Positions 1 to 46,375 are shown, counted from the stretch's first letter. The stretch: DNA of 64,000 nt from Ophelia neglecta (GCA_965285935.1 OZ260664.1:95170001-95234000), one strand, 5' to 3'. Numbers and translations are program-made. Notes: generated from the sequence alone by a model not told the origin.

Positions 1-2
1 GT

Positions 3-2195
3 TCTCTCATACCAACATCTGGAACATTTGTACTAATTTACAATGCGTACCAGCCAGGATCAATCGACAGGACAGTCCATAGCCAACATGTAGCCTTTCG
101 GGAAGGTAGAAACCCTGCAATAGTTTACTACTTTCAAGTAGTAACGTTGACACGGTTTAACTTTCGAAGGGTTCTGACATTTCATATTCGGGCAGACCCC
201 GATCTTCGTATCGCCTTACATGTAAACAAAGTGCATTTCAACTGTTTCCAGGCGTACGACGGCCCCACGTCTCGTTCTAAGTCTCTCAGACTAGGATGGC
301 AGAGGGGAGGCATTCGATACGTCTCAGCAATGTCAAGCTGGTTTATCATGATGCTTAGGATACTTAAATACGACCTTACTACATCGTGCAATGTAACAGA
401 TGAACTGAGCGCAAAATTTAGGTTAGTGTTTTCGACGACGAAGTCCACTCAACTACAAGTTACAGATTTCCATGTCCTCAACATACATCTTCCCTCAGTT
501 CATTGTCACGGCCACTCCGTGATGGTGTGCAAACTTGAGTTCAGCGCTACGAACAAACTGATGCATTTGAATGTATCTATTGACCAGTTTGTGACGGAAA
601 AGCCCACAGATTGCTGGAAGAGAGGGATGATGATTTATGAAACTGACCGGAAAAGGGACCAGGTAATATATGAGCACACACGACTATTGAGTATGCCTGT
701 CTTTACTTTATGCAATAACTACATAACGTGGGAGGGCGGTACCTCCGAAGGACCCATCATCGACAACATGGTCAGTTCTGGACATTCATACACCGTATTG
801 CTGTATTCCTATACAGAGAATTCGTCCAGAACCTGGGGCATTGGCGTGAAGCTCAGCGTGGAAACCACTCCTTGTGGAGGACTCTATCTGGACTGCCACA
901 AAAGAGATATTGTTAAAGACCCTTTGAAATCATACCACATTTCATTATACGGTCAGGTTCCTAGGTTTAAACAGATTGACGCCGATATGCGCTATATGAA
1001 CTTTTACACGTTTCGACCGCGTTGGTCTGCCTCCATCTATATTTTCATTGACGGCGGGACACTATCAATTGTAAGTGGTGTCACAAGCACTTTCAATTTT
1101 GTGGGAGTGCGAACAAGCGACAAATCTGGAAATTCCTGTGTTGTGCTGCATCATTTACAAACAGGAGTTCCCTTGCTGACGCCAAATAAAAGGTGTTATT
1201 TGTCAGTGGTTCAAATACGAGACACAGGACTTGATAATAATTTCGACATACAGTTAAGACGAAAAACGGAGAGGTCACTAAATTGCTCACCGTCTCGAAC
1301 TTTCGAATCCTGGGTTCTGAGTACATTTAAAGCCAATTCGCTGTCTGCAAATGCCTTATTATGGCAGGACCTTTTGCCTTTCTGTCAGAGTTTGTCCCTT
1401 TACGTAAAAGCCAACCCCATTCCAGCAAAGCTTTTTCCTGATCAACATATAACCAGTAAGTTCATGAGGAGAATGGAAGACATTTCAAACCTGGCCGATT
1501 CAAAGTCCTCCCTTCAGCATACAGTTCTTGTTCAGGGCACAAATCGGACGATGGCGGTGATCGCTCACTATGACAATGGTAATGGAATGGTGACCAGTAG
1601 GAGCTGCGGGTACAGGAAGCAGTCACCTATAACGGACACACGATTCAGGTTTTTTTCTGCCACATGCCCCCGTGTATGTTTATCAATTGACATCTTTTAT
1701 GAATTAGTAGAGAAGAAAATGTATAAAAAGTATCACCCAACGACATACCATAGGCAAACATGGAATGTGACCCTTACCAGTGACCGAGAATTTTCTTTGG
1801 TTGAGAGTGTTACCTTCTGTGATAGGTACATTATTATAAGACCTGATACCTCCCAATGTCCCCCAATAGACTGCAAGATCAAATTTGACATTGACCCATA
1901 TCATGCCTTTAATGCAATGAATCAAGAAATCAAATTTGTCCGACAAATAAAAAACTTCGTCCAAATGCAAACTGCGTATTTTGTGATCTGGGAGGAGGCG
2001 AAGATTTCTGGGAAACAGGCTGAAGCTAGATGTAAGCGGAGCGGAGGTCATCTGCCCGTTATTCATACAGAGAAAGATGCGATGGTAATCGGGGACCTGA
2101 TCTGGGGACGTTACGCTCCCGTCTCGCTATATGCAGCACCCTGTAGGACATATTCTGTCGTCTGTGCTCATTTCATTGGCTTGAACCCAATAACG
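3..2195 (+). CDS. Receptor copy 1, exon 1 (5' partial): CUB-like modules and N-terminal half of C-type lectin domain
   Basis: Frame is open from position 3 (SLIPTSGTFVLIYNAY...), matching the interior of exon 1 in copies 2-4. It ends with the CTL motif AEARCKRSGGHLPVIH...FIGL and the donor ACG|GTTTGT. Confidence 0.88.
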
Positions 2196-2828
2196 GTTTG
2201 TCCTTTCATAGATTTATGTTTACTTTTATACAGTATTTACTAACTTTTCACTGAAAAATTTCAATACAAATATATGTGATTATATCTTTTCTCAAAATAA
2301 TTCTTTTTTAAATAAACTTTTTTCTAAACTGTTAAACGCTGCGTAGGTCTCCCAATTCAAGACTTAAAACCATTAAAATTAAGAGTCAATTTCAAGCTTA
2401 ATTTTAAAATGGAACCACCCATTCTCTTCATTAAATGTTGTCCCTGTGGCAGCAGTATTTTTATATTACCAAATGGCGCTTAGAAATGCAAATACGAACA
2501 TATCTGCTAGAGGACAATATCTGCTGGTATTTCACTGCTTAGTCTTTGTTTCTAGCTAAAGCAATTAACTTACCGGCTTAACTCAGATGGCAATTTACAA
2601 GACGGCGATACAACCTCAAATTAAGTCGCTGTAAAAAAGGTACTTTTTTCGCAGATTTTTAAGAAAATTTTATTCCTGGGGACATCACAACACCAGCGAA
2701 TATTGATATCAGTCTAAAATGATCAGGAAGGTGCATCCTAGGATCAAAACTTTAATCTGTCCGCCCATTACTTTCAAACCTACTTAGGTGATGTTGTTAT
2801 AACGATTAGGTTTTACGATTACTCGTAG
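2196..2828 (+). other. Phase-0 GT-AG intron (633 bp) splitting the C-type lectin domain; equivalents at 13739-14381, 27705-28336, 39014-39646
   Basis: AT-rich, GTTTGT...TTACTCGTAG. Joining gives FIGLNPIT|GRWVDGSPVGFTKW, the CTL WIGL...WxDGS...W signature. Both splice sites are conserved in all four copies. Confidence 0.9.
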
Positions 2829-5800
2829 GGACGTTGGGTTGATGGAAGCCCCGTGGGATTCACCAAATGGACCAGTTCCCGCCACACCCTGCAAATGACG
2901 TCAGTATACTCAGCTATACCCGGGACAGATTCGACAACATCCACGTATCACAAAGACTGGTCAGACCTTCTATACAACCGATCTCATCGTGTTGTCCCAA
3001 ACTCGGAGGATGAATGCACAATGGCATTGTGGAATAAAGTTACCCTCGAATTTGAATGGGTCAGTATTAATTGTAACCAGAAAGTATTGCAATATAATTT
3101 AATTTGTGAAAGGAAACACCCGACCGGTAAACACCCAAAAAATGGGTTTCGGACAATTATGGCTGTTTACCTCTATAATATATTAGATGCATTTAAGTGG
3201 TATGAAAAAACCTTAGCAATTGGACCGACCGTCAGCGCATGGGCTATACTTGATTGTCAATCCTGGAAAATAGAATTCATCTTTGGGAAAACACATCTAT
3301 ATTTACTTGCCTCTGTTTCTTCATATATTAGTTTAAATGCAAAACTTTTAATGAGTGGACATTGTTCTATTTGGAAAAAGACTATCATTTCTTCAATGGG
3401 AGACAACAAACCGGGCGGGAACGATAAGCCGTTGGTTGGGGGGATGTACGTAACCGCTCTCTATCTGTCGCTTCCTCGCGAGATAATTCCACCACAGGAT
3501 TATGGTGACCCTGTTGATTTGTCCACAATGGTCAGTACAGGAATTGGCCAGTGCGCTTTTTATTGGGTTTATTATAACAACTCCTGTGTCAGACTTCATG
3601 ACACAACCGGAAGATTTATTGACAGTTTTAAAACTGTTAACATGTGTCAAAATAACGTCGCTGTTCACTCACTAGCAATTTTATACTCACGCATTATTAA
3701 TTTTGATATTTGTGACATCTATCAAATATTAATAACAAACATTACTGCTAGTGTTAGATCACAACTTTCATCTCTATTTATGGTATCATTTACGCCACCT
3801 TCAAATATCTCCACACCACACTTGCACGAGCTGTTTGTCTGTAAAGACGGACACTATATCCCAGACCTGTACTATCTGGACGGTACTCCAAACTGCCCAG
3901 ACGGTAGTGACGAGGTGGCCTTTATAAATGCATGTGAAATTCAGGGAAACGCAACATTCCAGTGTGGACACTGTCTGATTGGAACATGTGTGTGCATGGA
4001 ACATTACTACCAGTGTGAAACAGGGGGATGTGTAAAATGGGCGAAAGTATGTGATGGCGTGTTTAACTGTAACACTGGTGATGACGAACGGCATTGCAGT
4101 TCGACTTTTGTTCTAGAATTAGACCAAACGACAAACTTGTCCAGACATTTTGTCTGCAAACAAAGCGGACATGAAATACCCATTGACCTTTTGGACGATT
4201 TGGTGGCTGATTGTGAAGATTCGGAAGACGAAGCACTCGTCTCCTCATTCAACCGATACGAAACTCGAGATGCGATCACTATGAAATGTATTAAAACTGG
4301 AGGCTTGCCGTGTCTGCACGGACATCCTCGTTGCTACGCCGCTCATTTCATTTGCGTTTATGACCACAATTCGTTTGGACACCTCCGACATTGTCGGAAT
4401 GGTGCCCACCTTGCCGCCTGTGGCTTGGTCCAATGTCCGGCCATGTTCAAGTGCCCTGGCACTTACTGTGTGCCTGTTAGAAAGCTATGTGACGGAATAA
4501 CGGACTGCCCTGGAGCTGATGACGAACGGAGCTGTCCTACAGCGGCTCTGTGTCCGGGCTTCTTTAGATGCAAAAACAATAAATGTGTATCTCTACAGGA
4601 AATATGCGATGGAAAATCAGATTGTTCCCCTGACGATGATGACGAGTTTCTGTGTAATACTGTACAGTGTTCCGAGTTGTGTTCGTGTCTTGGTCGGTCC
4701 ATTGTTTGCCATCGTAATATTTCGTATATAAACATTGGTGGATACATGTCACTGAGCGTGCGCAATAATTTTGGCAGGCTACCAATCATTGACGACTACA
4801 GTGATCTCATTTCACTCACATTGATGGTTGATTTAAGCGGTAAATTGTCTAATATTACTAGTATGCCGACACTCTCTTTTCTGGACCTGGGCAACAACCG
4901 TATTACTGAATTGATTGGACAACCATTCAGTTCGTTGCGCAACTTGAGGAAATTATTATTAAGAGGAAATCACATCGAGAGCATCAATTCTGACAATTTC
5001 TTTGGTTTGAACGAGTTGCGGCTGCTCGATATCTCGAATGCTTATCTGCTACATCTAGATTCTGATTGCTTTACACATATGCATAAATTGGAGATTGTTG
5101 ACCTTTCTTCTAATAAATTGGAGGAAATAGACCCATTATTTCTGCAGAATCTTCCGCCGGGTGTGATATTGAATATCAATGAAAATCGCATGACTAAATT
5201 TCCAAAGAGGTCAGAGTTGATCCAGTCATCCATCCTGTTCATTTCTAATTCCAAATGGGTTTGTTGTTTAATTGGCATAGGTAAATGTCTTTGGTCTGGT
5301 GAGGTACTTGTTTGTGGACAGATATTATCATCTATAGAAATAGGTGCCATTCGTATCATGTCTGGATTGATGCTTATAATATTTTGTGTCTGTGTTATCC
5401 TTCGTGAATCAAAAAGGACTCGTCATAATCTATCCCACTGGTCGTTGATTGGAAATCACATATCTGATGCCACCATGGCCCTCTACTTAGGCCTTATGTG
5501 TGTAAAGGATGAGCTTGGTGTTTTCTCTAACGAGGAATACGTGCGTCGTTGGTGTATGGTACTCGGCTCTCTTCAGCTAGCGTCACTCTGTGGGTGGTCT
5601 GCCATGTGTATACTAATGTCTTACGCTTTTTATAAAAGTCTCAGTCTTTTAAAATTGGAACAACAGATGGGTTCTCTAAATAGTGTTGGGTTGGTATTGA
5701 TCACATGGCTGTTTGTGTATGGTCCTGTACTTGTTACCAGTTTGATAGCGCAAATATTCTCTGATGAAGTTCTGACTGCATCCGAAAACTGTTCTGCCAT

Positions 5801-6185
5801 TTTCCCTACCTCTTCTCCCGGTATAATACACATTGTGTTCCTGATAATTTGTTTACTGTTAAGTTTGATTGCACTGGGAGTGACAGCCGGGTTCTTTGGT
5901 ATGGCGTTAGCTATGGCAGCTAGGTCGGCAAGAAACGTGAAGAAGCATGGGGACAAAAGGAGCGCGAATTCATCCTCAACCCGTGTTGTCATAAGACACT
6001 TTGCCTTTACCACTATGATCCCGCTTTGTGGGTGTCTAGTTCTATCTGTTTGTCTACTGACCATCTTAACAATGGGATACTTAAGTCCATTTACCGGACA
6101 GTTGCTCTCCCTCTATGTGTTCCCATTACCAGGATTGATTAACCCGCTCTTCTTCCTGGTCCGAAGGTCCCTATTGTTGTTGTAA
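2829..6185 (+). CDS. Receptor copy 1, exon 2: CTL C-terminal half, LDLa repeats, LRRs, 7TM (GRL101-like LGR GPCR)
   Basis: LDLa motifs (CDGVFNCNTGDDERHC, CDGITDCPGADDERSC, CDGKSDCSPDDDDEFLC), LRRNT CSELCSCLGRSIVC, LRRs (LSFLDLGNNRI, LRKLLLRGNHI, LRLLDISNAYL, LEIVDLSSNKL), hinge VCCL, seven hydrophobic segments ending PLPGLINPLFF. Uninterrupted ORF. Confidence 0.9.
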   Translation, partial: GRWVDGSPVGFTKWTSSRHTLQMTSVYSAIPGTDSTTSTYHKDWSDLLYNRSHRVVPNSEDECTMALWNKVTLEFEWVSINCNQKVLQYNLICERKHPTGKHPKNGFRTIMAVYLYNILDAFKWYEKTLAIGPTVSAWAILDCQSWKIEFIFGKTHLYLLASVSSYISLNAKLLMSGHCSIWKKTIISSMGDNKPGGNDKPLVGGMYVTALYLSLPREIIPPQDYGDPVDLSTMVSTGIGQCAFYWVYYNNSCVRLHDTTGRFIDSFKTVNMCQNNVAVHSLAILYSRIINFDICDIYQILITNITASVRSQLSSLFMVSFTPPSNISTPHLHELFVCKDGHYIPDLYYLDGTPNCPDGSDEVAFINACEIQGNATFQCGHCLIGTCVCMEHYYQCETGGCVKWAKVCDGVFNCNTGDDERHCSSTFVLELDQTTNLSRHFVCKQSGHEIPIDLLDDLVADCEDSEDEALVSSFNRYETRDAITMKCIKTGGLPCLHGHPRCYAAHFICVYDHNSFGHLRHCRNGAHLAACGLVQCPAMFKCPGTYCVPVRKLCDGITDCPGADDERSCPTAALCPGFFRCKNNKCVSLQEICDGKSDCSPDDDDEFLCNTVQCSELCSCLGRSIVCHRNISYINIGGYMSLSVRNNFGRLPIIDDYSDLISLTLMVDLSGKLSNITSMPTLSFLDLGNNRITELIGQPFSSLRNLRKLLLRGNHIESINSDNFFGLNELRLLDISNAYLLHLDSDCFTHMHKLEIVDLSSNKLEEIDPLFLQNLPPGVILNINENRMTKFPKRSELIQSSILFISNSKWVCCLIGIGKCLWSGEVLVCGQILSSIEIGAIRIMSGLMLIIFCVCVILRESKRTRHNLSHWSLIGNHISDATMALYLGLMCVKDELGVFSNEEYVRRWCMVLGSLQLASLCGWSAMCILMSYAFYKSLSLLKLEQQMGSLNSVGLVLITWLFVYGPVLVTSLIAQIFSDEVLTASENCSAIFPTSSPGIIHIVFLIICLLLSLIALGVTAGFFGMALAMAARSARNVKKHGDKRSANSSSTRVVIRHFAFTTMIPLCGCLVLSVCLLTILTMGYLSPFTGQLLSLYVFPLPGLINPLFFLVRRSLLLL

Positions 6186-7286: not shown

Positions 7287-7521
7287 GTGGTCTGCCATGA
7301 GTATCATAATGCCTTACGCCTTTCACAAAAGTCGTAGTGTTTTAAATTTGGCACAACAGCTTGGTACTCTAAGTAGTGTTGGCTTGGTGTTGATAGTGTG
7401 GCTGTTTGTGTATCGTACTGTACTTGTTCCCAGAGTGATATAGCAGACATTGCCTGATGAGGTTTTAACTGCATCGGAAAACTCTTCTGCCATTTCCCCG
7501 ATCTCTTCTCTATGTATAATA
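7287..7521 (+). pseudogene. Decayed fragment of receptor TM3-TM4-ECL2 in spacer (also ~21460-21686, ~32794-33023, ~44101-44330)
   Basis: gtggtctgccatgagtatcataatgccttacgc...tgcatcggaaaactcttctgccattt aligns colinearly with exon 2 at ~5594-5830, with many substitutions and an in-frame TAG. Confidence 0.85.
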
Positions 7522-7860
7522 CTAATTTCATAACTGTTGGCCTCCTTTCTTTTAACCTCAGTGTTCTCATCCCATTTGACCAGAAGAATCCCAGCAACCA
7601 TTATATTTCCTATATGTATCAGTAGATGGTAAACATGATCCAAATGCTAAATAAATTATATATAGTAACTATTTGTAAAGTTAAAATAGACAGGAATGGC
7701 CTTGGTCGTTTTGCTTTTCAATCCTAACACGTTACGCTGATGGTTTAATGAGACACCATAAACTCTTATTATATTTAATGCTATTTCTCCAGGAAGAATT
7801 GTGGTAGTACCATTCAAGGTCGTAAGCTCTACCTAGCTTAGGCTAAATGTTTATACTAGC

Positions 7861-11050: not shown

Positions 11051-13738
11051 ATGGACAAAAAACACGTTATTCCTTTTCTTGTTCAACTTGTATTTCTTTT
11101 TAATACAATGTCGGCCTCGAAGTGGCAGAATTACATAACTAAGATCACGGTTTCCTCGCTTGACATGGAACAACCGAAGAACCTGGTTGAAACAAAGAAA
11201 CAAGCCTTGTCCTATCTGCAATTGAACGCGGCACACTGTTTGTTGGCAAGAGGGCGCAATACGCCACACGTGACAAAGTCACCCTGTGGATTCATTCGCG
11301 TCATTTCGGAAGTCGATAATAACTCGACAGAGTGGATGGTTGCTGTCGAGGGACCATTCCACATAAACGTCACCTTCCTGGAGTTCCGCCTGCCTCACAG
11401 TTTCGAATTATGTAGAGTCGAGAGTGTGTTACTTCAATGGTCATTGGCTACAACTAATCCTCCGCCGGAAATCCGGCTTTGTGGTCATAAGGAATCTTGG
11501 ACTGAATATGTATTTTCTGATACCATAAGACTAGCTCACGTAAGTTCTCTCATACCGACATCTGGAACATTTGTACTTATGTACAATGCGTACCAGCTAG
11601 GATCAATCGACAAGACAGTCCATAGCCAACATGTAGCCTTTCGGTTAGGTAAAAACCCTGCAATAGTTTATTACTTTCAAGTAGAAACGTTGACACGGTT
11701 TAACTTTCGAAGGGTACTGACAATTCATATCCGGGCAGACCCCGATCTTCGTATCGCCTTACATGTAAACAAACTGCATTTTAACTGTTTCCAGGCGTAC
11801 GACGGCCCCACGTCTCGTTCTAAGTCTCTCAGACTAGGATGGCAGACGGGAGGCATTGGATACGTCTCAGAAATGTCAAGCTGGTTTCTTATTATGCTGA
11901 GGGTAGTTATATACGATCCTGCTACATCGTGCAATGTTACAGGTGAACTATACGCCAAGTTTTCGTTATGGCTTTCAACAACGGAGTCCACTCAACTACA
12001 AGTTACAGATTTCCATGTCCTTAACATACATCTTCCCTCAGTTCATTGTTACGGCCACTCCGTGATGGTGTGCAAACTTGAGTTCAGCGCTACGAACAAA
12101 CTGATGCATTTGAATGTATCTATTAACCAGTTTGTGACAGAAAAGCCCACAGATTGCTGGAAGAGAGGGATGATGATTTATGAAACTGACCGGAAAAGGG
12201 ACCAGGTTATAGATGAGGACACACGACTATTGGGTATGCCTGTCTTTACTTTATGCAATAACTACATAACGTGGGAGGGCGGGGCCACCGAAGGACCCGT
12301 CATAGACAACATGGTCAGTTCTGGACATTCATACACCGTATTGCTGTATTCCTATACAGAGAATTCGTCCAGAACCTGGGGCATTGGCGTGAAGCTCAGC
12401 GTGGCAACCACTCCTTGTGGAGGACTGTATCTGGACTGCCACAAAAGAGATATTGTTAAAGACCCTTTGAAATCATACCACATTTCATTATACGGTCAGG
12501 TTCCTAGGTTTAAAAAGATTGACGCCGATATGCGGTATATGAACTTTTACACGTATCGACCGCGTTGGTCTGCCTCCATCTATATTTTCATTGACGGCGG
12601 GACACTATCAATTGTAAGTGGTGTCACAAACACTTTTAATTGTGTGGGAGTGCGAACAAGCGACAAATCTGGAAATTCCTGTGTTGTGCTGCATCATTTA
12701 CAGACAGGAGTTCCCTTGCTGAGGCCAAATAAAAGGTGTTATTTGTCAGTGGTTCAAATACGAGACACAGGACTTGATAATAATTTCGACATACAATTAA
12801 CACGGAAAACAGAGAGGTCACTAAATTGCTCGCCGTCTGGAACATTCGAATCCTGGGTGCTGAGAAAAAGTAAAGCAAATTTTCTGTCTGCAAATGCCTT
12901 ATTATGGCGGGACCTTCTGCCTTTCTGTCAGAGTTTGTCTCTTAACGTGAAAGCCAACCCCATTCCAGCAAAGCTTTTTCCTGATCAACATATAACCAGT
13001 AAGTTCATGAGGAGAATGGAAGACATTTCAAACCTGGCCGATTCAAAGACGTCCCTTCAGCATACAGTTCTTGTTCAGGGCACAAATCGGACGATGGCGG
13101 TGATCGCTCACTATGACGATGGTAATGGAATGGTGTCCAGTAGGAGCTGCGGGTACAGGAAGCAGTCACCTCTAACGGACACACGATTCAAGTTTTTTGC
13201 TGCTACATGCCCCCGTGTATGTGTATCAATAGACATATTTTATGAAATTGTAGAGAAGAAAATTTATAAAAAGTATCACCCAACGACATACCATAGGCAA
13301 ACATGGAATGTGACCCTTACCAGTGACCGAGAATTTTCACTCGTTGACAGTGTTACTTTTTGTGATAGGTACATTATTATAAGACCTGATACCTCCCAAT
13401 GTCCACCAATAGACTGCAAGATCAAATTTGACATTGACCCATATCATGCCTTTGATGCAATGAATCAAGAAATCAAATATGTCCGACAAATAAAAAACTT
13501 CGTCCAAACGCAAACTACGTATTTTGTCATCTGGGAGGAAGTGAAGATTTCTGGGAAACAGGCTGAAGCTAGATGTATGCGGATGGGAGGTCATCTGCCC
13601 GTTATTCATTCAGAGAAAGATGCGATGGTAATCGGGGACCTGATCTGGGGACGTTACGCTCCCGTCTCGCTATATGCAGCACCCTGTAGGACTTATTCTG
13701 TCGTCTGTGCTCATTTCATTGGCTTGAACCCAATAACG
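11051..13738 (+). CDS. Receptor copy 2, exon 1 (signal peptide, CUB/CUB-like modules, CTL N-terminal half); most divergent copy
   Basis: Start chosen at gccataATGG (MDKKHVIPFLVQLVFLFNTMSA, signal-peptide-like) rather than the upstream ATG at 10973. CUB pattern EWMVAVEGPFHINVTFLEFRLP..C..ESV...LCG...GTFVLMY. Open to the donor. Confidence 0.8.
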
Positions 13739-31693: not shown

Positions 31694-34600
31694 CAAAGGA
31701 AAGAACAGTAATTTGTGCATAAACAGCAATTGTTTCTTAAAGAACACACTAACTGTATTTGGGCCTATCTCTTATCAAGCACAGTATGCAATCACGCACT
31801 AATCCTTCCATTATTTCTGGCACCTAAATTGGAACAGTAAGTAAGTAATTCATTTATTTGGCGTCAATAGTACATATTGAAAAAAATATAAACTCTTAAC
31901 CAGCTGGTAAATCCAATATATAATACATATGATGCAACATATGGTCATTATTTATGAATCATACAGTTGGACAGGTATAATACAATGCGGAAAAAATGAG
32001 TTTTTCATGCATGAGTATGTGCTTGATACCACAATAGAAGGCATTATAAACAAGAAAAACAAAGAGTCATACATGGTTGCAGTTTGTCTTGGGAAACCTG
32101 TTACATCCATGATAATAAGCATATTCTCCATCTATTGACCGTTGGCGCAAACATTAAATTATCTACAGCAGGTAAAAATACCCTCAGTAGTTTTTTAACT
32201 GTAGGGTAAGCTCTAATGAGTGGTTATATCAAACCAGCCTTACTATGTAATCGGTGGGTAGAACTAAAAGTATTCATGATGAATAGAAGGTTGCTCCGCC
32301 TGGCGACTAAGGTCACAGTTACGACTAAAGACTCGTGTCTTCAGGCTCGCTTTTAATTGCTGATTGGCCGGAAATGAATGTTTACCATTACTTTCTTTAG
32401 TTCTGTTTTTAAAATCGGCATTTTTTGGTATTTTTTTTTCGATTGATATTGAGGTTTTATATACACTGCTTAAGTGTTTAGCGCCATTTGAGCTCAATTG
32501 TTATTATTACTTTTACCACGTATGTGTACAGATTAGTCTAAACAAATTGGGTGTTCGTAAATGGAATAGGCAGTAATATGGAAATAATATTAAGTTTCGA
32601 TGACGTTAATGTAACACTATTGAACTATAGTACCAAATGCATTATGTATTTCCTAAAATAAGCTTAGATTATATATTTAGCTGAACATAGTATATGCATT
32701 TATTCATATGAATTATAATATTTTGGTAGCGTGGTTTAAGTCAAAAATAAGGTGCATTAAGAAGTCAACCATATAAGTATTGGTTTTGATATTGTGGTCT
32801 GCCATGAGTATCATAATGCCTTACGCCTTTTACAAAAGTCGTAGTGTTTTTAATTTGGCACAACAGGTTGGTACTCTGAGTAGTGTTGGCTTGGTGTTGA
32901 TAGTGTGGCTGTTTGTGTATCGTACTTTACTTGTCCCCAGACTGATATAGCAGACATTGCCTGATGAGGTTTTAACTGCGTCGTTTCTGCCATTTTCCCG
33001 ACCTCTTTTCTAAGTATAATACAAATTTCATAACTGTTGGCGTCCTTTCTTACCTCAGTGTTCTCATCCCTTTTGACCCGAATAATCTGATATTATTCTC
33101 TCAGCCACCTTTTGTAATCCTATATGTATCAGTAGATTGTAAACATGATCAAAATTCTAAAGAAAATATATATAGTAACTATTTGTAAAGTATCAAAGTA
33201 GACAGGAATGGGCTTGGTCGTTTTGCTTAACAATCCTAACACGTTACGCTGATGGTTTAATGAGACACCATAAACTCTTATTATATTTAATGCTATTTCT
33301 TCAGGGAAAGTTGTGGTGGTACCATTCAAGGTCGTAAGCTCTACCTAGCTTAGGCTTAATGTTTATACTAGCGGCTTTTCAATTGACCACCTCTTCTTTT
33401 GTAAACAGTAGGCATATTGTCCCCAGTTCAATTATCATTTACTGCATAGTTTATCGTATTTATATTTATATTCATTATTTAAATTAACTCACGAGATGAT
33501 GAATGTTACCCTATTGAATAAACATAATGATATAATGATCAATTCGATATGTTTACTAATAATTCTATGATGGAACTGCATAAATATATAAATCATGCAT
33601 TATTTCACACTCATTCCATATGTCACATGCATACGTTAACCGTTTTATTAATGAAGTATTGTTCTGCATTATATATCGTAAATATAACGTTTATAGAGTA
33701 TAAAGTATAAAAAAGTGGTATCAGTTGAAAGGCAGTAAATACCCTGCAGACTCGGTAGAATGGTTAATAAAGAATAGTTCATACCGCTGTTGAAGAGCGT
33801 ACACACCTACCGGTCATTATGATTTCATTCAGTTGTACTTCAGAAAGTTAAACTCTTTTGAATACACAAAGTATTTGAATAGTCCACTTCCTACATGCAT
33901 GTGCGTTCTTGCTTATGAGGTCGTTGGGGCAATATAATTACCCTCACATCGCGTAACTTCTTTTATATTCACAGTTCATATACGAGTTAAAATTCCTTAT
34001 TAATGTTTTTATGCGGCCAGTGTATGCGGCGGGATTTATCATTGTATATCGACATTATTTGCAGTGCGTATTACCATGGGGATGCCCCAGTTATACGATG
34101 GAACGACGCACATCATAATTACAATTCACCCGTCAGACAGTTGTGTGAGGGTAATTATATTGCCCAAACGATCTCATTGGCAAGAAGACACAGGCATATA
34201 TGAAGTGGACTATTTTAATACTTTGTGTATTCACACGAGTTGAACAGCATGTGACTTTATCTAGAAATCATTTGAAAGATCAATGGTCTATAATAACTCT
34301 AAAACGCGATATCTACCGGATATTTTTCCGTTTAATAAAAGTTGCTTATTCACAATAAATCAAAGTTTGTTTTGTATTGTTTATGAAAAAACTTGATCAC
34401 ATTTAACCTATATAAATTATCACTAGTCATAAGTTCACGATAATACTGCCTCCCATTACAATTGATACAATCTTTATCAGATATTTGAATTTATATCTTG
34501 GCAAGCTTATTCTTTAATACGGAACTGTTGTTAGATTTTGGAAGCGGCCTGACCATTCGGGATAGGCTGGGCCCATTACTAATAGCTGAGACCCGTATTG

Positions 34601-36325: not shown

Positions 36326-39300
36326 ATGGACAAAAAAGCAATTATTCCTTTTCTTGTTCAACTTGTATTTCTTTTTAATGCAATCTCGGCCTCGAAGTGG
36401 CAGAATTACATAACTAAGATCACGGTTTCCTCGCTTGACATGGAACAACCGAAGAACCTGGTTGAAACCAAGAAACAAGCCTTGTCCTATCTGCAATTGA
36501 ACGCGGCACACTGTTTGTTGGCAAGAGGGCGCAATACGCCACACGTGACAAAGTCACCTTGTGGAGTCATTCGCGTCACTTCGGAAGTCGATAATAACTC
36601 GACAGAGTGGATGGTTGCTGTCGAGGGGCCATTCCACATAAACGTCACCTTCCTGGAGTTCCGCCTGCCTCACAGTTTTGAATTATGTAGAGTCGAAAGT
36701 GTGTTACTTCAATGGTCATTGGCTACAACTAATCCTCCGACGGAAATCCGGATTTGTGGTCATAAGGAATCTTGGACTGAATATGTATTTTCTAATACCA
36801 TAAGACTAGCTCACGTAAGTTCTCTCATACCAACATCTGGAACATTTGTACTAATTTACAATGCGTACCAGCCAGGATCAATCGACAGGACAGTCCATAG
36901 CCAACATGTAGCCTTTCGGGAAGGTAGAAACTCTGCAATAGTTTATTACTTTCAAGTAGAAACGTTGACACGGTTTAACTTTCGAAGGGTTCTGACAATT
37001 CATATCTGGGCAGACCCAGATCATCGTGTCGCTTTACAGCTTAATACAGGACGTGTTGAATGTTTCCAGGCGTACGACGGCCCCACGTCTCGTTCTAAGT
37101 CTCTCAGACTAGGATGGCAGAGGGGAGGCATTCGATACGTCTCAGCAATGTCAAGCTGGTTTATCATGATGCTTAGGATACTTAAATACGACCTTACTAC
37201 ATCGTGCAATGTAACAGATGAACTGAGCGCAAAATTTAAGTTAGTGTTTTCGACGACGGAGTCCACTCAACTACAAGTTACAGATTTCCATGTCCTCAAC
37301 ATACATCTTCCCTCAGTTCATTGTTACGGCCACTCCGTGATGGTGTGCAAACTTGAGTTCAGCGCTACGAACAAACTAATGCATTTAAATGTATCTATTA
37401 ACCAGTTTGTGACGGAAAAGCCCACAGATTGCTGGAAGAGAGGTATGATGATTTATGAAACTGACCGGAAAAGGGACCAGGTTATAGATGAGCACACACG
37501 ACTATTGAGTATGCCTGTCTTTACTTTATGCAATAACTACATAACGTGGGAGGGCGGTACCTCCGAAGGACCCATCATAGACAACATGGTTAGTTCTAGA
37601 CATTCATACACCGTATTGCTATATTCCTATACAGAGAATTTGTCCAGAACCTGGGGCATTGGCGTGAAGCTCAGCGTGGCAACCACTCCTTGTGGAGGAC
37701 TCTATCTGGACTGCCACAAAAGAGATATTGTTAAAGACCATTTGAAATCATACCACATTTCATCATACGGTCAGGTTCCTAGGTTTAAAAAGATTGACGC
37801 CGATATGCGGTATATGAACTTTTACACGTATCGACCACGTTGGTCTGCCTCCATCTATATTTTCATTGACGGCGGGACACTATCAATTGTAAGTGGTGTC
37901 ACAAACACTTTCAATTTTGTGGGAGTGCGAACAAGCGACAAAGCTGGAAATTCCTGTGTTGTGTTGCATCATATACAGACAGAAGTTCCCTTGCTGATGC
38001 CAAATAAAAGGTGTTATTTGTCAGTGGTTCAAATACGAGACACAGGACTTGATAATAATTTCGACATACAGTTAAGACGAAAAACGGAGAGGTCACTAAA
38101 TTGCTCACCGTCTCGAACTTTCGAATCCTGGGTTCTGAGTACATTTAAAGCCAATTCGCTGTCTGCAAATGCCTTATTATGGCGGGACCTTTTGCCTTTC
38201 TGTCAGAGTTTGTCCCTTTACGTAAAAGCCAACCCCATTCCAGCAAAGCTTTTTCCTGATCAACATATAACCAGTAAGTTCATGAGGAGAATGGAAGACA
38301 TTTCAAACCTGGCCGATTCAAAGTCCTCCCTTCAGCATACAGTTCTTGTTCAGGGCACAAATCGGACGATGGCGGTGATCGCTCACTATGACAATGGTAA
38401 TGGAATGGTGACCAGTAGGAGCTGCGGGTACAGGAAGCAGTCACCTATAACGGACACACGATTCAGGTTTTTTTCTGCCACATGCCCCCGTGTATGTTTA
38501 TCAATTGACATCTTTTATGAATTAGTAGAGAAGAAAATGTATAAAAAGTATCACCCAACGGCATACCATAGGCAAACATGGAATGTGACCCTTACCAGTG
38601 ACCGAGAATTTTCTTTGGTTGAGAGTGTTACCTTCTGTGATAGGTACATTATTATAAGACCTGATATCTCCCAATGTCCACCAATAGACTGCAAGATCAA
38701 ATTTGACATTGACCCATATCATGCCTTTAATGCAATGAATCAAGAAATCATATTTGTCCGACAAATAAAAAACTTCGTCCAAACGCAAACTGCGTATTTT
38801 GTGATCTGGGAGGAAGCGAAGATTTCTGGGAAACAGGCTGAAGATAGATGTAAGCGGAGCGGAGGTCATCTGCCCGTTATTCATACAGAGAAAGATGCGA
38901 TGGTAATCGGGGACCTGATCTGGGGACGTTACGCTCCCGTCTCGCTATATGCAGCACCCTGTAGGACTTATTCTGTCGTCTGTGCTCATTTCATTGGCTT
39001 GAACCCAATAACGGTTTGTCCTTTCATAGATTTATGTTTACTTTTATACAGTATTTACTAACTTTTCACTGAAAAATTTCAATACAAAAATATGTGATTA
39101 TATCTTTTCTCAAAATAATTTTTTTTTAAATAAACTTTTTTCTAAAATGTTAAACGCTGCGTAGGTCTCCCAATTCAAGACTTAAAACCATTAAAACCAG
39201 GAGTCAATTTCAAGCTTAATTTTAAAATGGAACCACCCCTTCTCTTCATTAAATGTTGTCCCTGTGGCAACAGTATTTTTATATTACCAAATGGCGCTTA

Positions 39301-42300
39301 GAAATGCAAATACGAACATATCTGCTAGAGGACAATATCTGCTGGTATTTCACTGCTTAGTCTTTGTTTCTAGCTAAAGCAATTAACTTACCGGCTTAAC
39401 TCAGATGGCAATTTACAAGACGGCGATACAGCCTCAAATTAAGTCGCTGTAAAAGGTACTTTTTTTCGCAGATTTTTAAGAAAATTTTATTCCTGGGGGA
39501 CATCACAACACCAGCGAATATTGATATCAGTCTTAAATGATCAGGAAGGTGCATCCTAGGATCAAAACTTTAATCTGTCCGCCCATTATTTTCAAACCTA
39601 CTTAGGTGATGTTGTTATAACAATTAGGTTTTACGTTTACTCGTAGGGACGTTGGGTTGATGGAAGTCCCGCGGGATTCACCAAATGGACCAGTTCCCGC
39701 CACACCCTGCAAATGACGTCAGTATACTCTGCTATACCCGGGACAGATTCGTCAACATCCACGTATCACAAAGACTGGTCAGACCTTCTATACAACCGAT
39801 CTCATCGTGTCTTCCCAAACTCGGAGGATGAATGCACAATGGCATTGTGGAATAAAGTTCCCCTCGAATTTGAATGGGTCAGTATTAATTGTAACCAGAA
39901 AATATTGCAATATAATTTAATTTGTGAAAAGAAACACCCGACCGGTAAACACTCAAAAAATGGGTTTCGGACAATTATGGCTGTTTACCTCTATAATATA
40001 TTAGATGCATTTAAGTGGTATGAAAAAACCTCAGCAATTGGACCGACCGTCAGCGCATGGGCTATACTTGATTGTCAATCCTGGAAATTAAGTTCATCTT
40101 TGGGGAGACCCATCTATTTTTACCTGCCTCTGTTTCTTCATATATTAGTTTAAATGCAAAACTTTTAATGAGTGGACATTGTTCTATTTGGAAAAAGACT
40201 ATCATTTCTTCAATGGGAGGCAACAAACCGGGCGGGAACGATAAGCCGTTGGTAGGGGGGATGTACATAACCGTTCTCTATCTGTCGCTTCCTCGCGAGA
40301 TAATTCCACCACAAGATTATGGTGACCCCGTTGATTTGTCCACAATGGTCAGTACAGGAATTGGCCAGTGCGCTTTTTATTGGGTTTATCATAACAACTC
40401 CTGTATCAGACTTCATGACACAACCGGAAGGTATATTGACAGTATTAAAACTGTTAATATGTGTCAAAATAATGTCGCTGTTCACTCACTAGCAATTTTA
40501 TACTCACGCATTATTAATTTTAATATCTGTAACATCTATCAAATATTAATAACAAACATTACTGCTCGTGTTAAATCACAGCTTCCATCTCTATTTATGG
40601 TATCATTTACGCCACCTTCAAATCTCTCCACACCACACCTGCACGAGCTGTTTGTCTGTAAAGACGGACACTATATCCCAGACCTGCACTATCTGGACGG
40701 TACTCCAGACTGCCCAGACGGTAGTGACGAGGTGGCCTTTATAAATGCATGTGACATTCAGGGAAACGCAACATTCCAGTGTGGACACTGTCTGATTGGA
40801 ACATGTGTGTGCATGGAACATTACTACCAGTGTGAAACAGGGGGATGTGTAAAATGGGCGAAAGTATGTGATGGCGTGTTTAACTGTAACACTGGTGATG
40901 ACGAACGGCATTGCAGTTCGACTTTTATTCTAGAATTAGACCAAACGACAAACTTGTCCAGACATTTTGTCTGCAAACAAAGCGGACATGAAATACCCAT
41001 TGACCTTTTGGACGATTAAGTGGCTGATTGTGAAGATTCGGAAGACGAAGCACTCGTCTCCTCATTCAACAGATACGAAACTCGAGATGCGATCACTATG
41101 AAATGTATTAAAACTGGAGGCTTGCCGTGTCTGCACGGACATCCTCGTTGCTACGCCGCTCATTTCATTTGCGTTTATGACCACAATTCGTTTGGACACC
41201 TCCGACATTGTCGGAATGGTGCCCACCTTGCCGCCTGTGGCTTGGTCCAATGTCCGGCCATGTTCAAGTGCCCTGGCACTTACTGTGTGCCTGTTAGAAA
41301 GCTATGTGACGGAATAACGGACTGCCCCGGAGCTGATGACGAACGGAGCTGTCCTACAGCGGCTCTGTGTCCGGGCTTCTTTAGATGCAAAAACAATAAA
41401 TGTGTATCTCTACAGGAAATATGCGATGGAAAATCAGATTGTTCCCCTGACGATGATGACGAGTTTCTGTGTAATACTGTACAGTGTTCCGAGTTGTGTT
41501 CGTGTCTTGGTCGGTCCATTGTTTGCCATCGTAATATTTCGTATATAAACATTGGTGGATACATGTCACTGAGCGTGCGCAATAATTTTGGCAGGCTACC
41601 AATCATTGACGACTACAGTGATCTCATTTCACTCACATTGATGGTTGATTTAAGCGGTAAATTGTCTAATATTTCTAGTATGCCGACACTCTCTTTTCTA
41701 GACCTGGGCAACAACCTTATTACTGAATTGATTGGACAACCATTCAGTTCGTTGCGCAACTTGAGGAAATTATTATTAAGAGGAAATTACATCGAGAGCA
41801 TCAAATCTGACAATTTCTTTGGTTTGAACGAGTTGCGGCTGCTCGATATCTCGAATGCTTATCTGCTACATCTAGATTCTGATTGCTTTACACATATGCA
41901 TAAATTGGAAATTGTTGACCTTTCTTCTAATAAATTGGAGGAAATAGACCCATTATTTTTGCAGAATCTTCCGCCGGGTGTGATATTGAATATCAATGAA
42001 AATCGCATGACTAAATTTCCAAAGAGGTCAGAGTTGATCCAGTCATCCATCCTGTTCATTTCTAATTCAAAATGGGTTTGTTGTTTAATTGGCATAGGTA
42101 AATGTCTTTGGTCTGGTGAGGAACTTGTTTGTGGACAGATATTATCATCTATAGAAATAGGTGCCATTCGTATCATGTCTGGATTGATGCTTATAATATT
42201 TTGTGTGTGTGTTATCCTTCGAGAATCAAAAAGGACTCGTCATATTCTATCCCATTGGTCGTTGATTGGAAATCACATATCTGATGCCACTATGGCCATC

Positions 42301-42996
42301 TACTTAGGCCTTATGTATGTAAAGGATGAGCTTGGTGTTTTCTCTAACGAGGAATACGTGCGTCGTTGGTGTATGGTACTCAGCTCTCTTCAGCTAGCGT
42401 CACTCTGTGGGTGGTCTGCCATGTGTATACTAATGTCTTACGCTTTTTATAAAAGTCTCAGTCTTTTAAAATTGGAACAACAGATGGGTTCTCTAAATAG
42501 TGTTGGGTTTGTATTGATCACATGGCTGTTTGTGTATGGTCCTGTACTTGTTCCCAGTTTGATAGCGCAAATATTCTCTGATGAAGTTCTGACTGCATCC
42601 GAAAACTGTTCTGCCATTTTCCCTACCTCTTCTCCCGGTATAATACACATTGTGTTCCTGATAATTTGTTTACTGTTAAGTTTGATTGCACTGGGAGTGA
42701 CAGCCGGGTTCTTTGGTATGGCGTTAGCTATGGCAGCTAGGTCGGCAAGAAACGTGCAGAAACACGGGGACAAAAAGAGCGCGAATTCATCCTCAACCCG
42801 TGTTGTCATAAGACACTTTGCCTTTACCACTATGATCCCGCTTTGTGGGTGTCTAGTTCTATCTGTTTGTCTACTGACCATCTTAACAATGGGATACTTA
42901 AGTCCATTTACCGGACAGTTGCTCTCCCTCTATGTGTTCCCATTACCAGGATTGATTAACCCGCTCTTCTTCCTGGTCCGAAGGTCCCTATTGTAG
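36326..42996 (+). pseudogene. Receptor copy 4: exon 1 intact (36326-39013), exon 2 (39647-42996) disabled
   Basis: 1-nt deletion at ~40085 (tggaaatta vs tggaaaatta), in-frame TAA at 41017-41019 (TTG in other copies), and a terminal TAG two codons early. Confidence 0.85.
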
Positions 42997-45900
42997 TTGT
43001 AACATAGAAAAGAACAGTTTTTGTGCATTAACAGCAATTGTTTCTTAAAGAACACACTAACTGTATTTGGGCCTATCTCTTATCAAGCACAGTATGCAAT
43101 CACGCACTAATCCTTCCATTATTTCTGGCACCTAAATTGGAACAGTAAGTAAGTAATTCATTTATTTGGCGTCAATAGTACATATTGAAAAAAATATAAA
43201 CTCTTAACCAGCTGGTAAATCCAATATATAATACATATGATGCAACATATGGTCATTATTTATGAATCATACAGTTGGACAGGTATAATACAATGCGAAA
43301 AAATGAGTTTTTCATGCATGAGTATGTGCTTAATACCACAATAGAAGGCATTATAAACAAGAAAAACAAAGAGTCATACATGGTTGCAGTTTGTCTTGGG
43401 AAACCTGTTACATCCATGATAATAAGCATATTCTCCATCTATTGACCGTTGGCGCAAACATTAAATTATCTACAGCAGGTAAAAATACCCTCAGTAGTTT
43501 TTTAACTGTAGGGTAAGCTCTAATGAGTGGTTATATCAAACCAGCCTTACTATGTAATCGGTGGGTAGAACTAAAAGTATTCATGATGAATAGAAGGTTG
43601 CTCCGCCTGGCGACTAAGGTCACAGTTACGACTAAAGACTCGTGTCTTCAGGCTCGCTTTTAATTGCTGATTGGCCGGAAATGAATGTTTACCATTACTT
43701 TCTTTAGTTCTGTTTTTAAAATCGGCATTTTTTGGTATTTTTTTTTCGATTGATATTGAGGTTTTATATACACTGCTTAAGTGTTTAGCGCCATTTGAGC
43801 TCAATTGTTATTATTACTTTTACCACGTATGTGTACAGATTAGTCTAAACAAATTGGGTGTTCGTAAATGGAATAGGCAGTAATATGGAAATAATATTAA
43901 GTTTCGATGACGTTAATGTAACACTATTGAACTATAGTACCAAATGCATTATGTATTTCCTAAAATAAGCTTAGATTATATATTTAGCTGAACATAGTAT
44001 ATGCATTTATTCATATGAATTATAATATTTTGGTAGCGTGGTTTAAGTCAAAAATAAGGTGCATTAAGAAGTCAACCATATAAGTATTGGTTTTGATATT
44101 GTGGTCTGCCATGAGTATCATAATGCCTTTCGCCTTTTACAAAAGTCGTAGTGTTTTTAATTTGGCACAACAGGTTGGTACTCTGAGTAGTGTTGGCTTG
44201 GTGTTGATAGTGTGGCTGTTTGTGTATCGTACTTTACTTGTCCCCAGACTGATATAGCAGACATTGCCTGATGAGGTTTTAACTGCGTCGTTTCTGCCAT
44301 TTTCCCGACCTCTTTTCTAAGTATAATACAAATTTCATAACTGTTGGCGTCCTTTCTTACCTCAGTGTTCTCATCCCTTTTGACCCGAATAATCTGATAT
44401 TATTCTCTCAGCCACCTTTTGTAATCCTATATGTTTCAGTAGATTGTAAACATGATCAAAATTCTAAAGAAAATATATATAGTAACTATTTGTAAAGTAT
44501 CAAAGTAGGCAGGAATGGGCTTGGTCGTTTTGCTTAACAATCCTAACACGTTACGCTGATGGTTTAATGAGACACCATAAACTCTTATTATATTTAATGC
44601 TATTTCTTCAGGGAAAGTTGTGGTGGTACCATTCAAGGTCGTAAGCTCTACCTAGCTTAGGCTTAATGTTTATACTAGCGGCTTTTCAATTGACCACCTC
44701 TTCTTTTGTAAACAGTAGGCATATTGTCCCCAGTTCAATTATCATTTACTGCATAGTTTATCGTATTTATATTTATATTCATTATTTAAATTAACTCACG
44801 AGATGATGAATGTTACCCTATTGAATAAACATAATGATATAATGATCAATTCGATATGTTTACTAATAATTCTATGATGGAACTGCATAAATATATAAAT
44901 CATGCATTATTTCACACTCATTCCATATGTCACATGCATACGTTAACCGCTGTTTTATTAATGAAGTATTGTTCTGCATTATATATCGTAAATATAACGT
45001 TTATAGAGTATAAAGTATAAAAAAGTGGTATCAGTTGAAAGGCAGTAAATACCCTGCAGACTCGGTAGAATGGTTAATAAAGAATAGTTCATACCGCTGT
45101 TGAAGAGCGTACACACCTACCGGTCATTATGATTTCATTCAGTTGTACTTCAGAAAGTTAAACTCTTTTGAATACACAAAGTATTTGAATAGTCCACTTC
45201 CTACATGCATGTGCGTTCTTGCTTATGAGGTCGTTGGGGCAATATAATTACCCTCACACCGCGTAACTTCTTTTATATTCACAGTTCATATACGAGTTAA
45301 AATTCCTTATTAATGTTTTTATGCGGCCAGTGTATGCGGCGGGATTTATCATTGTATATCGACATTATTTGCAGTGCGAATTACCATGGGGATGCTCCAG
45401 TAATACGATGGAATGACGCACATTATAATAACAATCCACCGGTCAGACAGTTGTGTGAGGGTAATTATATTGCCCCAACGATCTCATTGGCAAGAACACA
45501 CAGGCATATAGGAAGTGGACTATTTTAATATTTTGTATATTCATAAGAGTTGATCAGCATGTGACTTTATCTAGAAATCATTTGAAAGATCAATGGTCTA
45601 TAATAACTCTAAAATGGGATATCTACCGGATATATTTCTGTTTGATAAAAGTTGCTTATTCACAATAAATCAACGTTTGTTCTGTGTTATTTATGAAAGA
45701 ACTTGGTAATTGTCATCACATTCAAATTATATAAATTGTCACTAGTCATAAGTTAACAATAATTTTGTGGCACGGCTACTACCAGGAAAGACTGGTAGAT
45801 ATAAAATTTTTGTGTTTGTTTTTGATACTTGTTTGTTTTGGTAAGAATAGGTTTTAAGCAGAATTTACCAGGGAAGAAGAGTTCACTGATTGCCAATATT

Positions 45901-46373: not shown

Positions 46374-46375
46374 TT

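What the first reader, a model, noticed from the sequence alone, without database searches (positions are those of the whole stretch)
120..43000. Patchwork diversification of the ectodomain among tandem copies
Seen: copy 1 matches copy 2 at IRADPDLRIALHVNK.HFNC (copies 3/4: IWADPDHRVALQLNTGRVEC). About 20 codons later it matches copies 3/4 at QRGGIRYVSAMSSWFIMMLRILKYDLTT (copy 2: QTGGIGYVSEMSSWFLIMLRVVIYDPAT). Exon 2 also switches partners: 1=2 at IEFIFGKTHLYLLAS, 2=3 at KILQYNLICEKKHPTGKHS, and 1=3=4 across the LDLa block. Replacement changes cluster in short tracts of the second CUB-like module (e.g. 11725-11990, 25692-25757), while the 7TM is nearly invariant. Inference: gene conversion or unequal crossover shuffles variable tracts onto a constant signalling module, as in immune or allorecognition receptor arrays. 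This is the best candidate here for an undescribed system.
Basis: partly seen in the sequence, partly recalled or inferred. Interest (0 to 1): 0.8.

Follow-up and report, generated by a model that had tools for sequence, protein, structure and literature searches.

The report
Mosaic tandem array of receptor genes
Four tandem copies of a giant invertebrate GRL101-type receptor gene have swapped DNA segments by gene conversion or unequal crossover, but the swapping looks like ordinary tandem-repeat behaviour and not a dedicated diversity-generating system.

Summary
Sites where one copy differs from the rest fall into 225 runs against about 426 expected (z = -16.9). All three pairings share fragments longer than permutation allows.

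The array has four units of about 11.3 kb. Each unit holds a two-exon gene of 2014 codons: signal peptide, a string of CUB-like modules, a likely C-type lectin domain split by the intron, LDLa repeats, LRRs and a divergent LGR-type 7TM.

The immune-like diversification reading is not supported:
- The mosaic is at least as strong in the promoter, intron and spacers (z = -12.1) as in coding DNA (z = -8.7), and it crosses the 7TM.
- dN/dS is 0.3-0.5 everywhere (exon 1 about 0.45, 7TM 0.23-0.51).
- In the two hyperdivergent patches, silent sites are as elevated as replacement sites (pS 0.29-0.48, pN 0.16-0.22).
- Copies 2 and 4 carry frameshifts or stop codons.
- A sister array in the same genome varies at different positions.

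Tandem GRL101-like arrays are already described in snails. I read this as concerted evolution of a young receptor array, a new member of a known kind. Long-read validation of the assembly was not possible.

The parts
1..2195 (+). Copy 1, exon 1. It starts upstream of the window at L011:9508, which is window -492. The 896 codons are intact.
   Evidence: the upstream 10 kb was fetched, and exon 1 has 2688 nt with no stop.
2829..6185 (+). Copy 1, exon 2 (second half of the likely lectin domain, LDLa, LRR, 7TM). It is intact at 1118 codons plus stop.
11051..13738 (+). Copy 2, exon 1, intact. It contains the copy-2-specific divergent tract 11847-12304.
   Evidence: A short-read contig covers 11817-12010.
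14382..20397 (+). Copy 2, exon 2, broken. A 2-nt insertion at 16690-16691 is repeated at 19347-19348. A 2657-bp tandem duplication makes 14335-16991 equal to 16992-19648.
25017..27704 (+). Copy 3, exon 1, intact: signal peptide plus CUB-like modules plus the first half of the likely lectin domain. The GT donor is at 27705.
28337..31693 (+). Copy 3, exon 2, intact. The AG acceptor is at 28335-28336. It holds LDLa repeats, LRRs and the 7TM.
36326..39013 (+). Copy 4, exon 1, intact and 99% identical to copy 3.
39647..43002 (+). Copy 4, exon 2, broken. There is a 1-nt deletion after 40084, a TAA at 41017-41019 and a TAG at 42994-42996.
25698..25751 (+). Hyperdivergent tract A in the second CUB-like module. 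Copies 3/4 (copy 4: 37007-37060) differ by 31.5% from copies 1/2 (189-242 and 11732-11785).
   Evidence: pS 0.33-0.48, pN 0.22.
28780..28815 (+). Short tract in exon 2 where copies 3/4 differ by 19% from copies 1/2 (IKFIFGETHLFLPAS against IEFIFGKTHLYLLAS).
32753..32983 (+). Decayed 7TM-like fragment in the 3' spacer of the unit. The same fragment lies at 7246-7560, 21419-21727 and 44060-44290.
   Evidence: 37-58% identity to 7TM residues 88-193, with stop codons inside.
54477..58923 (-). Inverted, internally deleted relic of a fifth unit, lying beyond a Pao-type retroelement.
   Evidence: about 90% identical to all four copies over the promoter and first exon start.

Best explanation
This is a young tandem array of four ~11.3-kb units at G000:C7, about 95.1675-95.2158 Mb. 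A dead inverted fifth unit lies beyond a retroelement.

Each unit encodes a ~2014-aa GRL101/relaxin-receptor-like LGR. Its order is signal peptide, a string of CUB-like beta-sandwich modules, a likely C-type lectin domain split by the single intron, LDLa repeats, LRRs, and a divergent LGR-type 7TM.

The units evolve in concert. Whole-unit duplication by unequal crossover made copies 3 and 4 (99.35% identical). Many ectopic gene-conversion or crossover events, 9 bp to ~2.5 kb long, then exchanged segments among copies 1, 2 and 3/4. These events ignore coding boundaries. The visible patchwork is the footprint of that homogenisation laid over older divergence of 5-10%.

The few hyperdivergent patches (16-31% locally) are either stretches that escaped homogenisation or imports from copies that are no longer present in this haplotype.

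The coding sequence is under moderate purifying selection (dN/dS ~0.4). Copies 2 and 4 have recently been disabled.

Shown here: the anatomy, the mosaic, the selection ratios and the breaks. Inferred: the order of events, the receptor function (ligand capture by the CUB/lectin/LDLa/LRR ectodomain, with signalling through the 7TM), and that the breaks are not assembly errors.
For: - Unit structure and identities.
- Splice sites that restore a lectin-like WIGL...WxDGS motif.
- Mosaic significance in coding DNA (z = -8.7) and non-coding DNA (z = -12.1).
- Significant shared fragments for all three pairings.
- Tract map spanning upstream region, exons, intron and spacer.
- dN/dS of 0.21-0.54 in every domain.
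- Patches with pS 0.29-0.48 and pN 0.16-0.22.
- No N:S contrast between patches and the rest, or between exon 1 and the 7TM.
- Frameshifts and stops in copies 2 and 4.
- Domains: Pfam LDLa and LRR; multi-CUB fold matches at E = 5e-11; RXFP1/LGR4 profile matches and TSHR/LGR4/FSHR fold matches.
- The closest named relative is a GRL101-like protein.
- More than 50 paralogous loci in arrays on C1, C2, C7 and C8.
- Tandem GRL101-like arrays are known in snails: PMC6573481 and PMC12297450.
Against: - No donor for the hyperdivergent tracts exists anywhere in this assembly, so their origin is unexplained.
- High divergence at both silent and replacement sites in small islands is also what selection against homogenisation at a specificity-determining site would leave.
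- dN/dS of 0.4-0.67 averaged over tens of codons cannot exclude a few positively selected sites.
- With only three independent lineages, the tests have little power.
- The long-range assembly is unverified. Only short contigs of one sample were available, and none covered the duplication junction at 16991/16992.
Confidence: 0.72

Rival explanations
1. One reading: the array is a diversity-generating receptor system. Gene conversion, possibly with the broken copies 2 and 4 as donors, shuffles specificity cassettes of the CUB-like ectodomain onto a constant signalling module. Selection favours the resulting variety, as in immune or allorecognition arrays.
For: - The mosaic is real.
- Very short, very divergent tracts sit in one ectodomain module.
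- Intact and broken copies alternate.
- A cluster of lectin-bearing GRL101-like genes lies in a snail region associated with schistosome resistance (PMC12297450).
- The family is greatly expanded in this genome.
Against: - dN/dS is below 1 in the patches and is not different from the rest of the gene.
- Silent sites are equally elevated.
- The mosaic is as strong in non-coding DNA and includes the 7TM.
- The sister array has different hot spots.
- There are only four copies, two of them intact.
- No expression or population data could be obtained.
Confidence: 0.12
2. The patches are islands of old divergence that selection keeps from being homogenised. In this view copies 1/2 and 3/4, and copy 2 alone, have diverged in ligand specificity at the second CUB-like module, and conversions across those sites are purged. 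This is subfunctionalisation, not ongoing diversification.
For: - Local divergence of 16-31% at both silent and replacement sites lies within flanks of 2-4%.
- Both variants share some states with the outgroup paralogs, which indicates age and not a recent burst.
- No donor is present elsewhere in the assembly.
Against: - Similar short divergent islands occur in the non-coding 3' spacer (c3 32880-32924 and 32942-33212), where no such selection is expected.
- Copy 2, which carries one of the islands, is broken.
Confidence: 0.2
3. All or part of the mosaic, the 2657-bp duplication and the frame breaks are assembly artefacts: chimeric joins among near-identical paralogs or haplotypes, or uncorrected read errors.
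For: - The duplication in copy 2 has a single mismatch in 2660 bp.
- No contig covered 16300-17499.
- The copy 4 deletion lies in an A4 run.
Against: - Tracts as short as 36-54 bp, flanked by copy-specific sites, cannot come from mis-joined long reads.
- Independent short-read contigs reproduce the copy-2-specific tract at 11817-12010.
- The copy 2 frameshift is a non-homopolymer 2-nt insertion, and the copy 4 stop needs two substitutions.
- Haplotype switching would not create similarity to a paralog.
Confidence: 0.08

Closest known systems
GRL101 (Lymnaea stagnalis) and GRL101-like / type C LGR receptors (relaxin receptors RXFP1/2)
   Same: - The order LDLa repeats, then LRR ectodomain, then rhodopsin-type 7TM is the same.
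- The LRR-7TM aligns colinearly with a scallop GRL101-like protein.
- The profile matches RXFP1 from the LRRs through the 7TM.
- The fold matches TSHR, LGR4 and FSHR.
   Different: - An extra ~900-aa exon of CUB-like modules plus a likely lectin domain sits upstream.
- Identity is only 22-30%.
- The 7TM is not recognised by Pfam 7tm_1.
- The 7TM lacks the D/ERY arginine (SYA instead), has NPLFF, and has almost no C-terminal tail.
Tandem clusters of GRL101-like GPCR genes in gastropods: Biomphalaria sudanica SudRes2 (PMC12297450) and the apple-snail expansions (PMC6573481)
   Same: - Dense tandem arrays of LGR genes occur there too. SudRes2 has 12 genes with a C-type lectin + LDL + LRR + 7TM architecture.
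- Those haplotypes differ in structure and include truncated members.
- Roles in immunity or chemosensing have been proposed.
   Different: - Those papers do not describe gene-conversion mosaics (one search found no paper pairing the terms).
- The present proteins add several CUB-like modules.
- The present proteins belong to a DRY-less subfamily with few public relatives.
Concerted evolution of young tandem duplicates by ectopic gene conversion and unequal crossover (general knowledge: for example globin, opsin, RH and MHC paralogs)
   Same: - Segment-wise partner switching occurs.
- Tracts run from tens of bp to a few kb.
- Coding and non-coding DNA are affected equally.
- Islands of retained divergence are present.
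   Different: Nothing distinguishes this array from that pattern with the data at hand.
Diversified invertebrate and agnathan recognition arrays (lamprey VLR cassettes, sea-urchin Trf/185-333, snail FREPs, Hydractinia Alr)
   Same: These are also clustered paralogs with recombination-like mosaics in an extracellular recognition region.
   Different: - There is no excess of replacement change here.
- There is no cassette library.
- The variation is not confined to the recognition part.
- There is no evidence of somatic or population hyperdiversity.

Membership tests
LGR type C / GRL101-like receptors | LDL-receptor class A repeats N-terminal to the LRRs | tested here: met
   Pfam Ldl_recept_a, E = 2.7e-21, three stretches passing on their own. 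LRP2/VLDLR matches.
LGR type C / GRL101-like receptors | Leucine-rich-repeat ectodomain directly preceding the 7TM | tested here: met
   Pfam LRR_8, E = 4.6e-15. LGR4/5 and RXFP1 matches. The model has an LRR solenoid followed by seven helices.
LGR type C / GRL101-like receptors | Rhodopsin-class 7TM homologous to the LGR 7TM | tested here: met
   Pfam 7tm_1 gives no hit. The family profile matches RXFP1 over profile positions 59-516 and the LGR4 7TM over 219-516. The profile includes canonical relatives, which may help that match. Foldseek gives TSHR/LGR4/FSHR at E ~1e-14 with TMq up to 0.67.
LGR type C / GRL101-like receptors | Class-A activation motifs (D/ERY at the TM3 end, NPxxY in TM7) expected of a G-protein-coupled member | tested here: not met
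   The alignment shows SYA where relatives P0009, P0011 and P0012 have DRL, DRT and NRY. TM7 reads NPLFF, and the protein ends 9 residues after that motif. Coupling is therefore inferred, not shown.
CUB domain proteins | CUB beta-sandwich modules | tested here: inconclusive
   The Pfam CUB score of 19.6 bits is below the 21.4 cut-off. The AlphaFold model (pLDDT 71.6) best matches cubilin, enteropeptidase, neuropilin, PCPE-1 and C1r/C1s CUB arrays with probability 1.00. Atlas leads point to CUB + Lectin_C.
C-type lectin-like domain | A complete CTLD with WIGL and WxDG motifs and the cysteine pattern | tested here: inconclusive
The domain is split by the intron, and each half alone gives no Pfam hit. 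The halves align weakly but colinearly with the region of P0012, which carries Lectin_C. The motifs are read directly.
Diversity-generating recognition-receptor arrays | Recombination or gene-conversion mosaic among members | tested here: met
Diversity-generating recognition-receptor arrays | Excess of replacement over silent change in the variable tracts | tested here: not met
   pN/pS is 0.46-0.67 in the patches, and dN/dS is 0.44-0.50 in exon 1. Fisher tests are not significant.
Diversity-generating recognition-receptor arrays | Variation confined to the recognition part, with a constant signalling part | tested here: not met
   Mosaic tracts cover the 7TM, intron, promoter and spacers. dN/dS in the 7TM is comparable with that in exon 1.
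Diversity-generating recognition-receptor arrays | Population hyperpolymorphism, and immune or allorecognition expression | not testable with these tools
   Only three contig sets from one sample were found, and no RNA run is on record.

The most novel reading that the evidence does not exclude
The short hyperdivergent tracts in the second CUB-like module would be ligand-specificity cassettes. They would be moved among array members by micro-conversion, with the disabled copies 2 and 4 serving as silent donors. That would give an invertebrate a combinatorial repertoire of giant CUB-lectin-LGR receptors whose DRY-less 7TM signals in a non-canonical way.
Probability: 0.08. Interest if true: 0.7.

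Novelty: new member of a known kind. Interest (0 to 1): 0.3.

Why it matters
Expanded GRL101-like receptor families are orphan receptors. They have been suggested to act in chemosensation or immunity in molluscs.

This array shows how such families turn over: duplication, conversion, and the rapid death of copies. It also documents a poorly represented subfamily with a CUB-rich ectodomain and a 7TM that lacks the DRY arginine.

It does not provide evidence for a new diversity-generating system. The main value is to keep an ordinary concerted-evolution signal from being mistaken for one.

Tried and rejected
- **Donor search.** The patch regions of copies 3 and 2 were searched as DNA against the whole genome. 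Only the four array copies were found.
- **Outgroup polarisation.** The sister-cluster paralogs share states with both patch variants, so they are not decisive. The inverted relic is equidistant from both groups (17 against 14 sites).
- **Organism identification.** The nearest related locus is an unnamed ENA contig with the same two-exon layout. A stop-free piece of mitochondrial COX1 returned only unnamed fragments. The 8 in-frame TGA codons in COX1 (read as Trp), the Pao element and the mollusc-like best named hit point to an invertebrate animal.
- **Read support.** The three runs found belong to one sample and are short Logan contigs. They confirm local sequence such as 11817-12010. They cannot span tracts, and they left 16300-17499 almost uncovered, which proves nothing.
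- **Pfam on the 7TM and on the lectin halves.** No hits.
- **LTR pair for the Pao element.** None found within 45500-54800.
- **Literature.** No paper pairs GRL101 with gene conversion, and the multi-term domain search gave nothing relevant.
- **Joined protein.** The exons were handled separately.
Full report
**Anatomy**

The window is G000:C7:95170001-95234000 of a 762-Mb animal assembly. Self-comparison shows four head-to-tail units of about 11.3 kb.
- Unit 1 starts upstream of the window, at about L011:7821, and ends at 9033.
- Unit 2 is 9034-23000.
- Unit 3 is 23001-34338.
- Unit 4 is 34339-45763.

After unit 4 come a 30-bp minisatellite, Pao-type retroelement ORFs at 47492-52385, and an inverted, internally deleted relic of a fifth unit at 54477-58923. 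The whole-genome search with the 7TM finds only these four close copies.

Each unit holds a gene of two coding exons. In copy 3, exon 1 is 25017-27704 and exon 2 is 28337-31693. A GT donor at 27705 and an AG acceptor at 28335-28336 join ...HFIGLNPIT to GRWVDGSPAGFTKW..., which restores a lectin-like motif. The product has 2014 residues.

**What the protein is**

- Pfam finds LDLa and LRR domains, and only a sub-threshold CUB.
- An AlphaFold model of exon 1 (33-sequence alignment, pLDDT 71.6) is a chain of beta-sandwich modules. Its best structural matches are multi-CUB proteins such as cubilin, enteropeptidase, neuropilin, PCPE-1 and C1r/C1s.
- The language-model atlas also points to CUB + Lectin_C clusters. 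I treat this as a lead only.
- The lectin domain is inferred from motifs and from weak colinear matches to a relative that carries Lectin_C. Its halves give no Pfam hit.

Pfam does not recognise the 7TM. Three other lines place it with the LGRs:
- The LRR-7TM aligns colinearly with a scallop GRL101-like protein.
- A family profile matches RXFP1 and LGR4.
- The model matches TSHR, LGR4, FSHR and LHCGR.

The 7TM lacks the D/ERY arginine (SYA instead), has NPLFF in TM7, and ends 9 residues after that motif. More canonical relatives keep DR/NRY.

The exon 1 ectodomain is rare in public data. It has 62 hits among 1.84 billion representatives, the best at 28% identity. The genome itself holds more than 50 paralogous loci in arrays on C1, C2, C7 and C8. 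These include a cluster of at least 9 genes 260-360 kb upstream, at about 48-52% amino-acid identity.

**State of the copies**

- Copies 1 and 3 are intact.
- Copy 2 has a 2-nt non-homopolymer insertion at 16690-16691. It also has a 2657-bp tandem duplication (14335-16991 = 16992-19648, one mismatch) that repeats the frameshift.
- Copy 4 is 99.35% identical to copy 3. It has a 1-nt deletion after 40084, a TTG-to-TAA change at 41017-41019 and a TAG two codons before the normal end.

**The observation**

Copies 3 and 4 are nearly identical, so there are three lineages. I classified each variable site by which lineage stands apart.
- These classes are strongly clustered: 225 runs against 425.8 +/- 11.9 expected (z = -16.9), with a longest run of 62.
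- The clustering holds within exon 1 (z = -7.8), exon 2 (z = -4.4), all coding DNA (z = -8.7) and non-coding DNA (z = -12.1).
- Longest shared fragments exceed permutation limits for c1-c2, c1-c3/4 and c2-c3/4.
- A three-state Viterbi segmentation gives about 19 tracts of 9 bp to 2.5 kb. They run through the promoter, both exons, the intron, the 7TM and the 3' spacer.

The patchwork is therefore real, but it is a property of the DNA of the whole unit and not of the ectodomain.

**Selection**

- Nei-Gojobori estimates give dN/dS of 0.38-0.46 for the whole gene. By region they are 0.44-0.50 for exon 1, 0.30-0.54 for the LDLa block, 0.21-0.42 for the LRRs and 0.23-0.51 for the 7TM.
- The 7TM has fewer replacements because it also has fewer silent differences. 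It is more recently homogenised, not more constrained.
- Patch A (aa 225-247; c3 25698-25751; 31.5% local divergence) has pS 0.33-0.48 and pN 0.22.
- Patch B (aa 264-310, specific to copy 2) has pS 0.29 and pN 0.16.
- N:S counts do not differ between the patches and the rest (p = 0.24), or between exon 1 and the 7TM (p = 0.25-1.0).
- The patches are clusters of point substitutions without indels.
- No donor exists elsewhere in the assembly.
- Outgroup paralogs share states with both variants, which suggests old divergence and not a recent burst.
- Comparable short divergent islands occur in the non-coding spacer.
- In the sister array, the variable hot spots fall at aa 310-370, 460-530, 580-620 and 680-720, not at aa 225-310.

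**Interpretation**

The simplest account is concerted evolution of a young tandem array.
- Unequal crossover creates and deletes units. Copies 3/4, the internal duplication of copy 2, and a 46.3-kb segmental duplication in the sister cluster are examples.
- Ectopic conversion spreads segments among units.
- Moderate purifying selection acts on the coding parts.
- Copies die quickly.

Islands of high divergence are either unconverted remnants or imports from copies absent in this haplotype. A version in which selection protects these islands remains possible. With three lineages and one haplotype, they also cannot formally exclude it.

**Assembly**

The only public runs that hold the sequence are three contig sets from one sample. 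Their short contigs reproduce local sequence, including the copy-2-specific tract at 11817-12010. They cannot bridge tracts, and they left 16300-17499 almost empty. Tracts of 36-54 bp and non-homopolymer breaks argue against artefact, but long reads are needed.

**Comparison with what is known**

- Tandem expansion of GRL101-like GPCRs is documented in apple snails, with 29-132 genes and expression in tentacles and labial palps (PMC6573481).
- A cluster of 12 lectin-LDL-LRR GRL101-like genes lies in a schistosome-resistance region of Biomphalaria sudanica. Its haplotypes differ in structure and include truncated members (PMC12297450).
- No paper links GRL101 with gene conversion.
I confirmed the architecture independently. 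I did not check its statement about catalogued relatives beyond.

**Verdict**

- The mechanism of exchange is supported.
- The functional interpretation is not supported.
- The array is a new member of a known kind, of modest interest.
- The DRY-less 7TM and the rarity of the ectodomain are the most notable side observations.

Noticed in passing
window 30740-31690 (also 5232-6182): The 7TM of this subfamily has SYA in place of the class-A D/ERY motif, NPLFF in place of NPxxY, and ends 9 residues after that motif. Canonical GRL101-like relatives keep DR/NRY. Signalling may be non-canonical.
   Followed up: partly
window 14335-19648: A 2657-bp tandem duplication lies inside copy 2, running from the intron end to the LRR/7TM boundary. 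The two halves differ at one base and both carry the 2-nt frameshift. It is either a very recent event or an assembly artefact. No contig covered the junction.
   Followed up: partly
window 7246-7560, 21419-21727, 32753-32983, 44060-44290: Each unit carries a decayed fragment in its 3' spacer that resembles 7TM residues ~88-193 (37-58% identity, with stops). This suggests the ancestral unit once held a second receptor gene.
   Followed up: no
window 47492-52385: ORFs of a Pao/BEL-type retroelement (gag-protease, Peptidase_A17, integrase, DUF5641) separate the array from an inverted relic unit. No LTR pair was found within 45500-54800. I describe it only.
   Followed up: partly
window 46122-46391: A 30-bp minisatellite of about 9 units lies between unit 4 and the retroelement.
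   Followed up: no
window 54477-58923 (minus strand): An inverted relic of a fifth unit keeps the promoter and the first ~88 codons, joined directly to 3' spacer sequence. It is about 90% identical to all four copies.
   Followed up: partly
G000:C7:94.81-94.91 Mb (L005-L010, L016-L023): A sister cluster holds at least 9 two-exon genes in both orientations, at 48-52% amino-acid identity to this array. It includes a 46.3-kb segmental duplication and several broken members.
   Followed up: partly
G000:C1:26.51-26.70 Mb: Another array of the family shows matches repeating every 62,941 bp with identical scores. This suggests large, very recent segmental duplications or an assembly repeat.
   Followed up: no
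L024 (ENA contig ERZ25069296:ctg22357): An unnamed public contig carries the same layout: a ~926-aa ectodomain ORF followed by a 910-aa LDLa-LRR ORF, at about 29% identity. A second copy lies in inverted orientation nearby.
   Followed up: no
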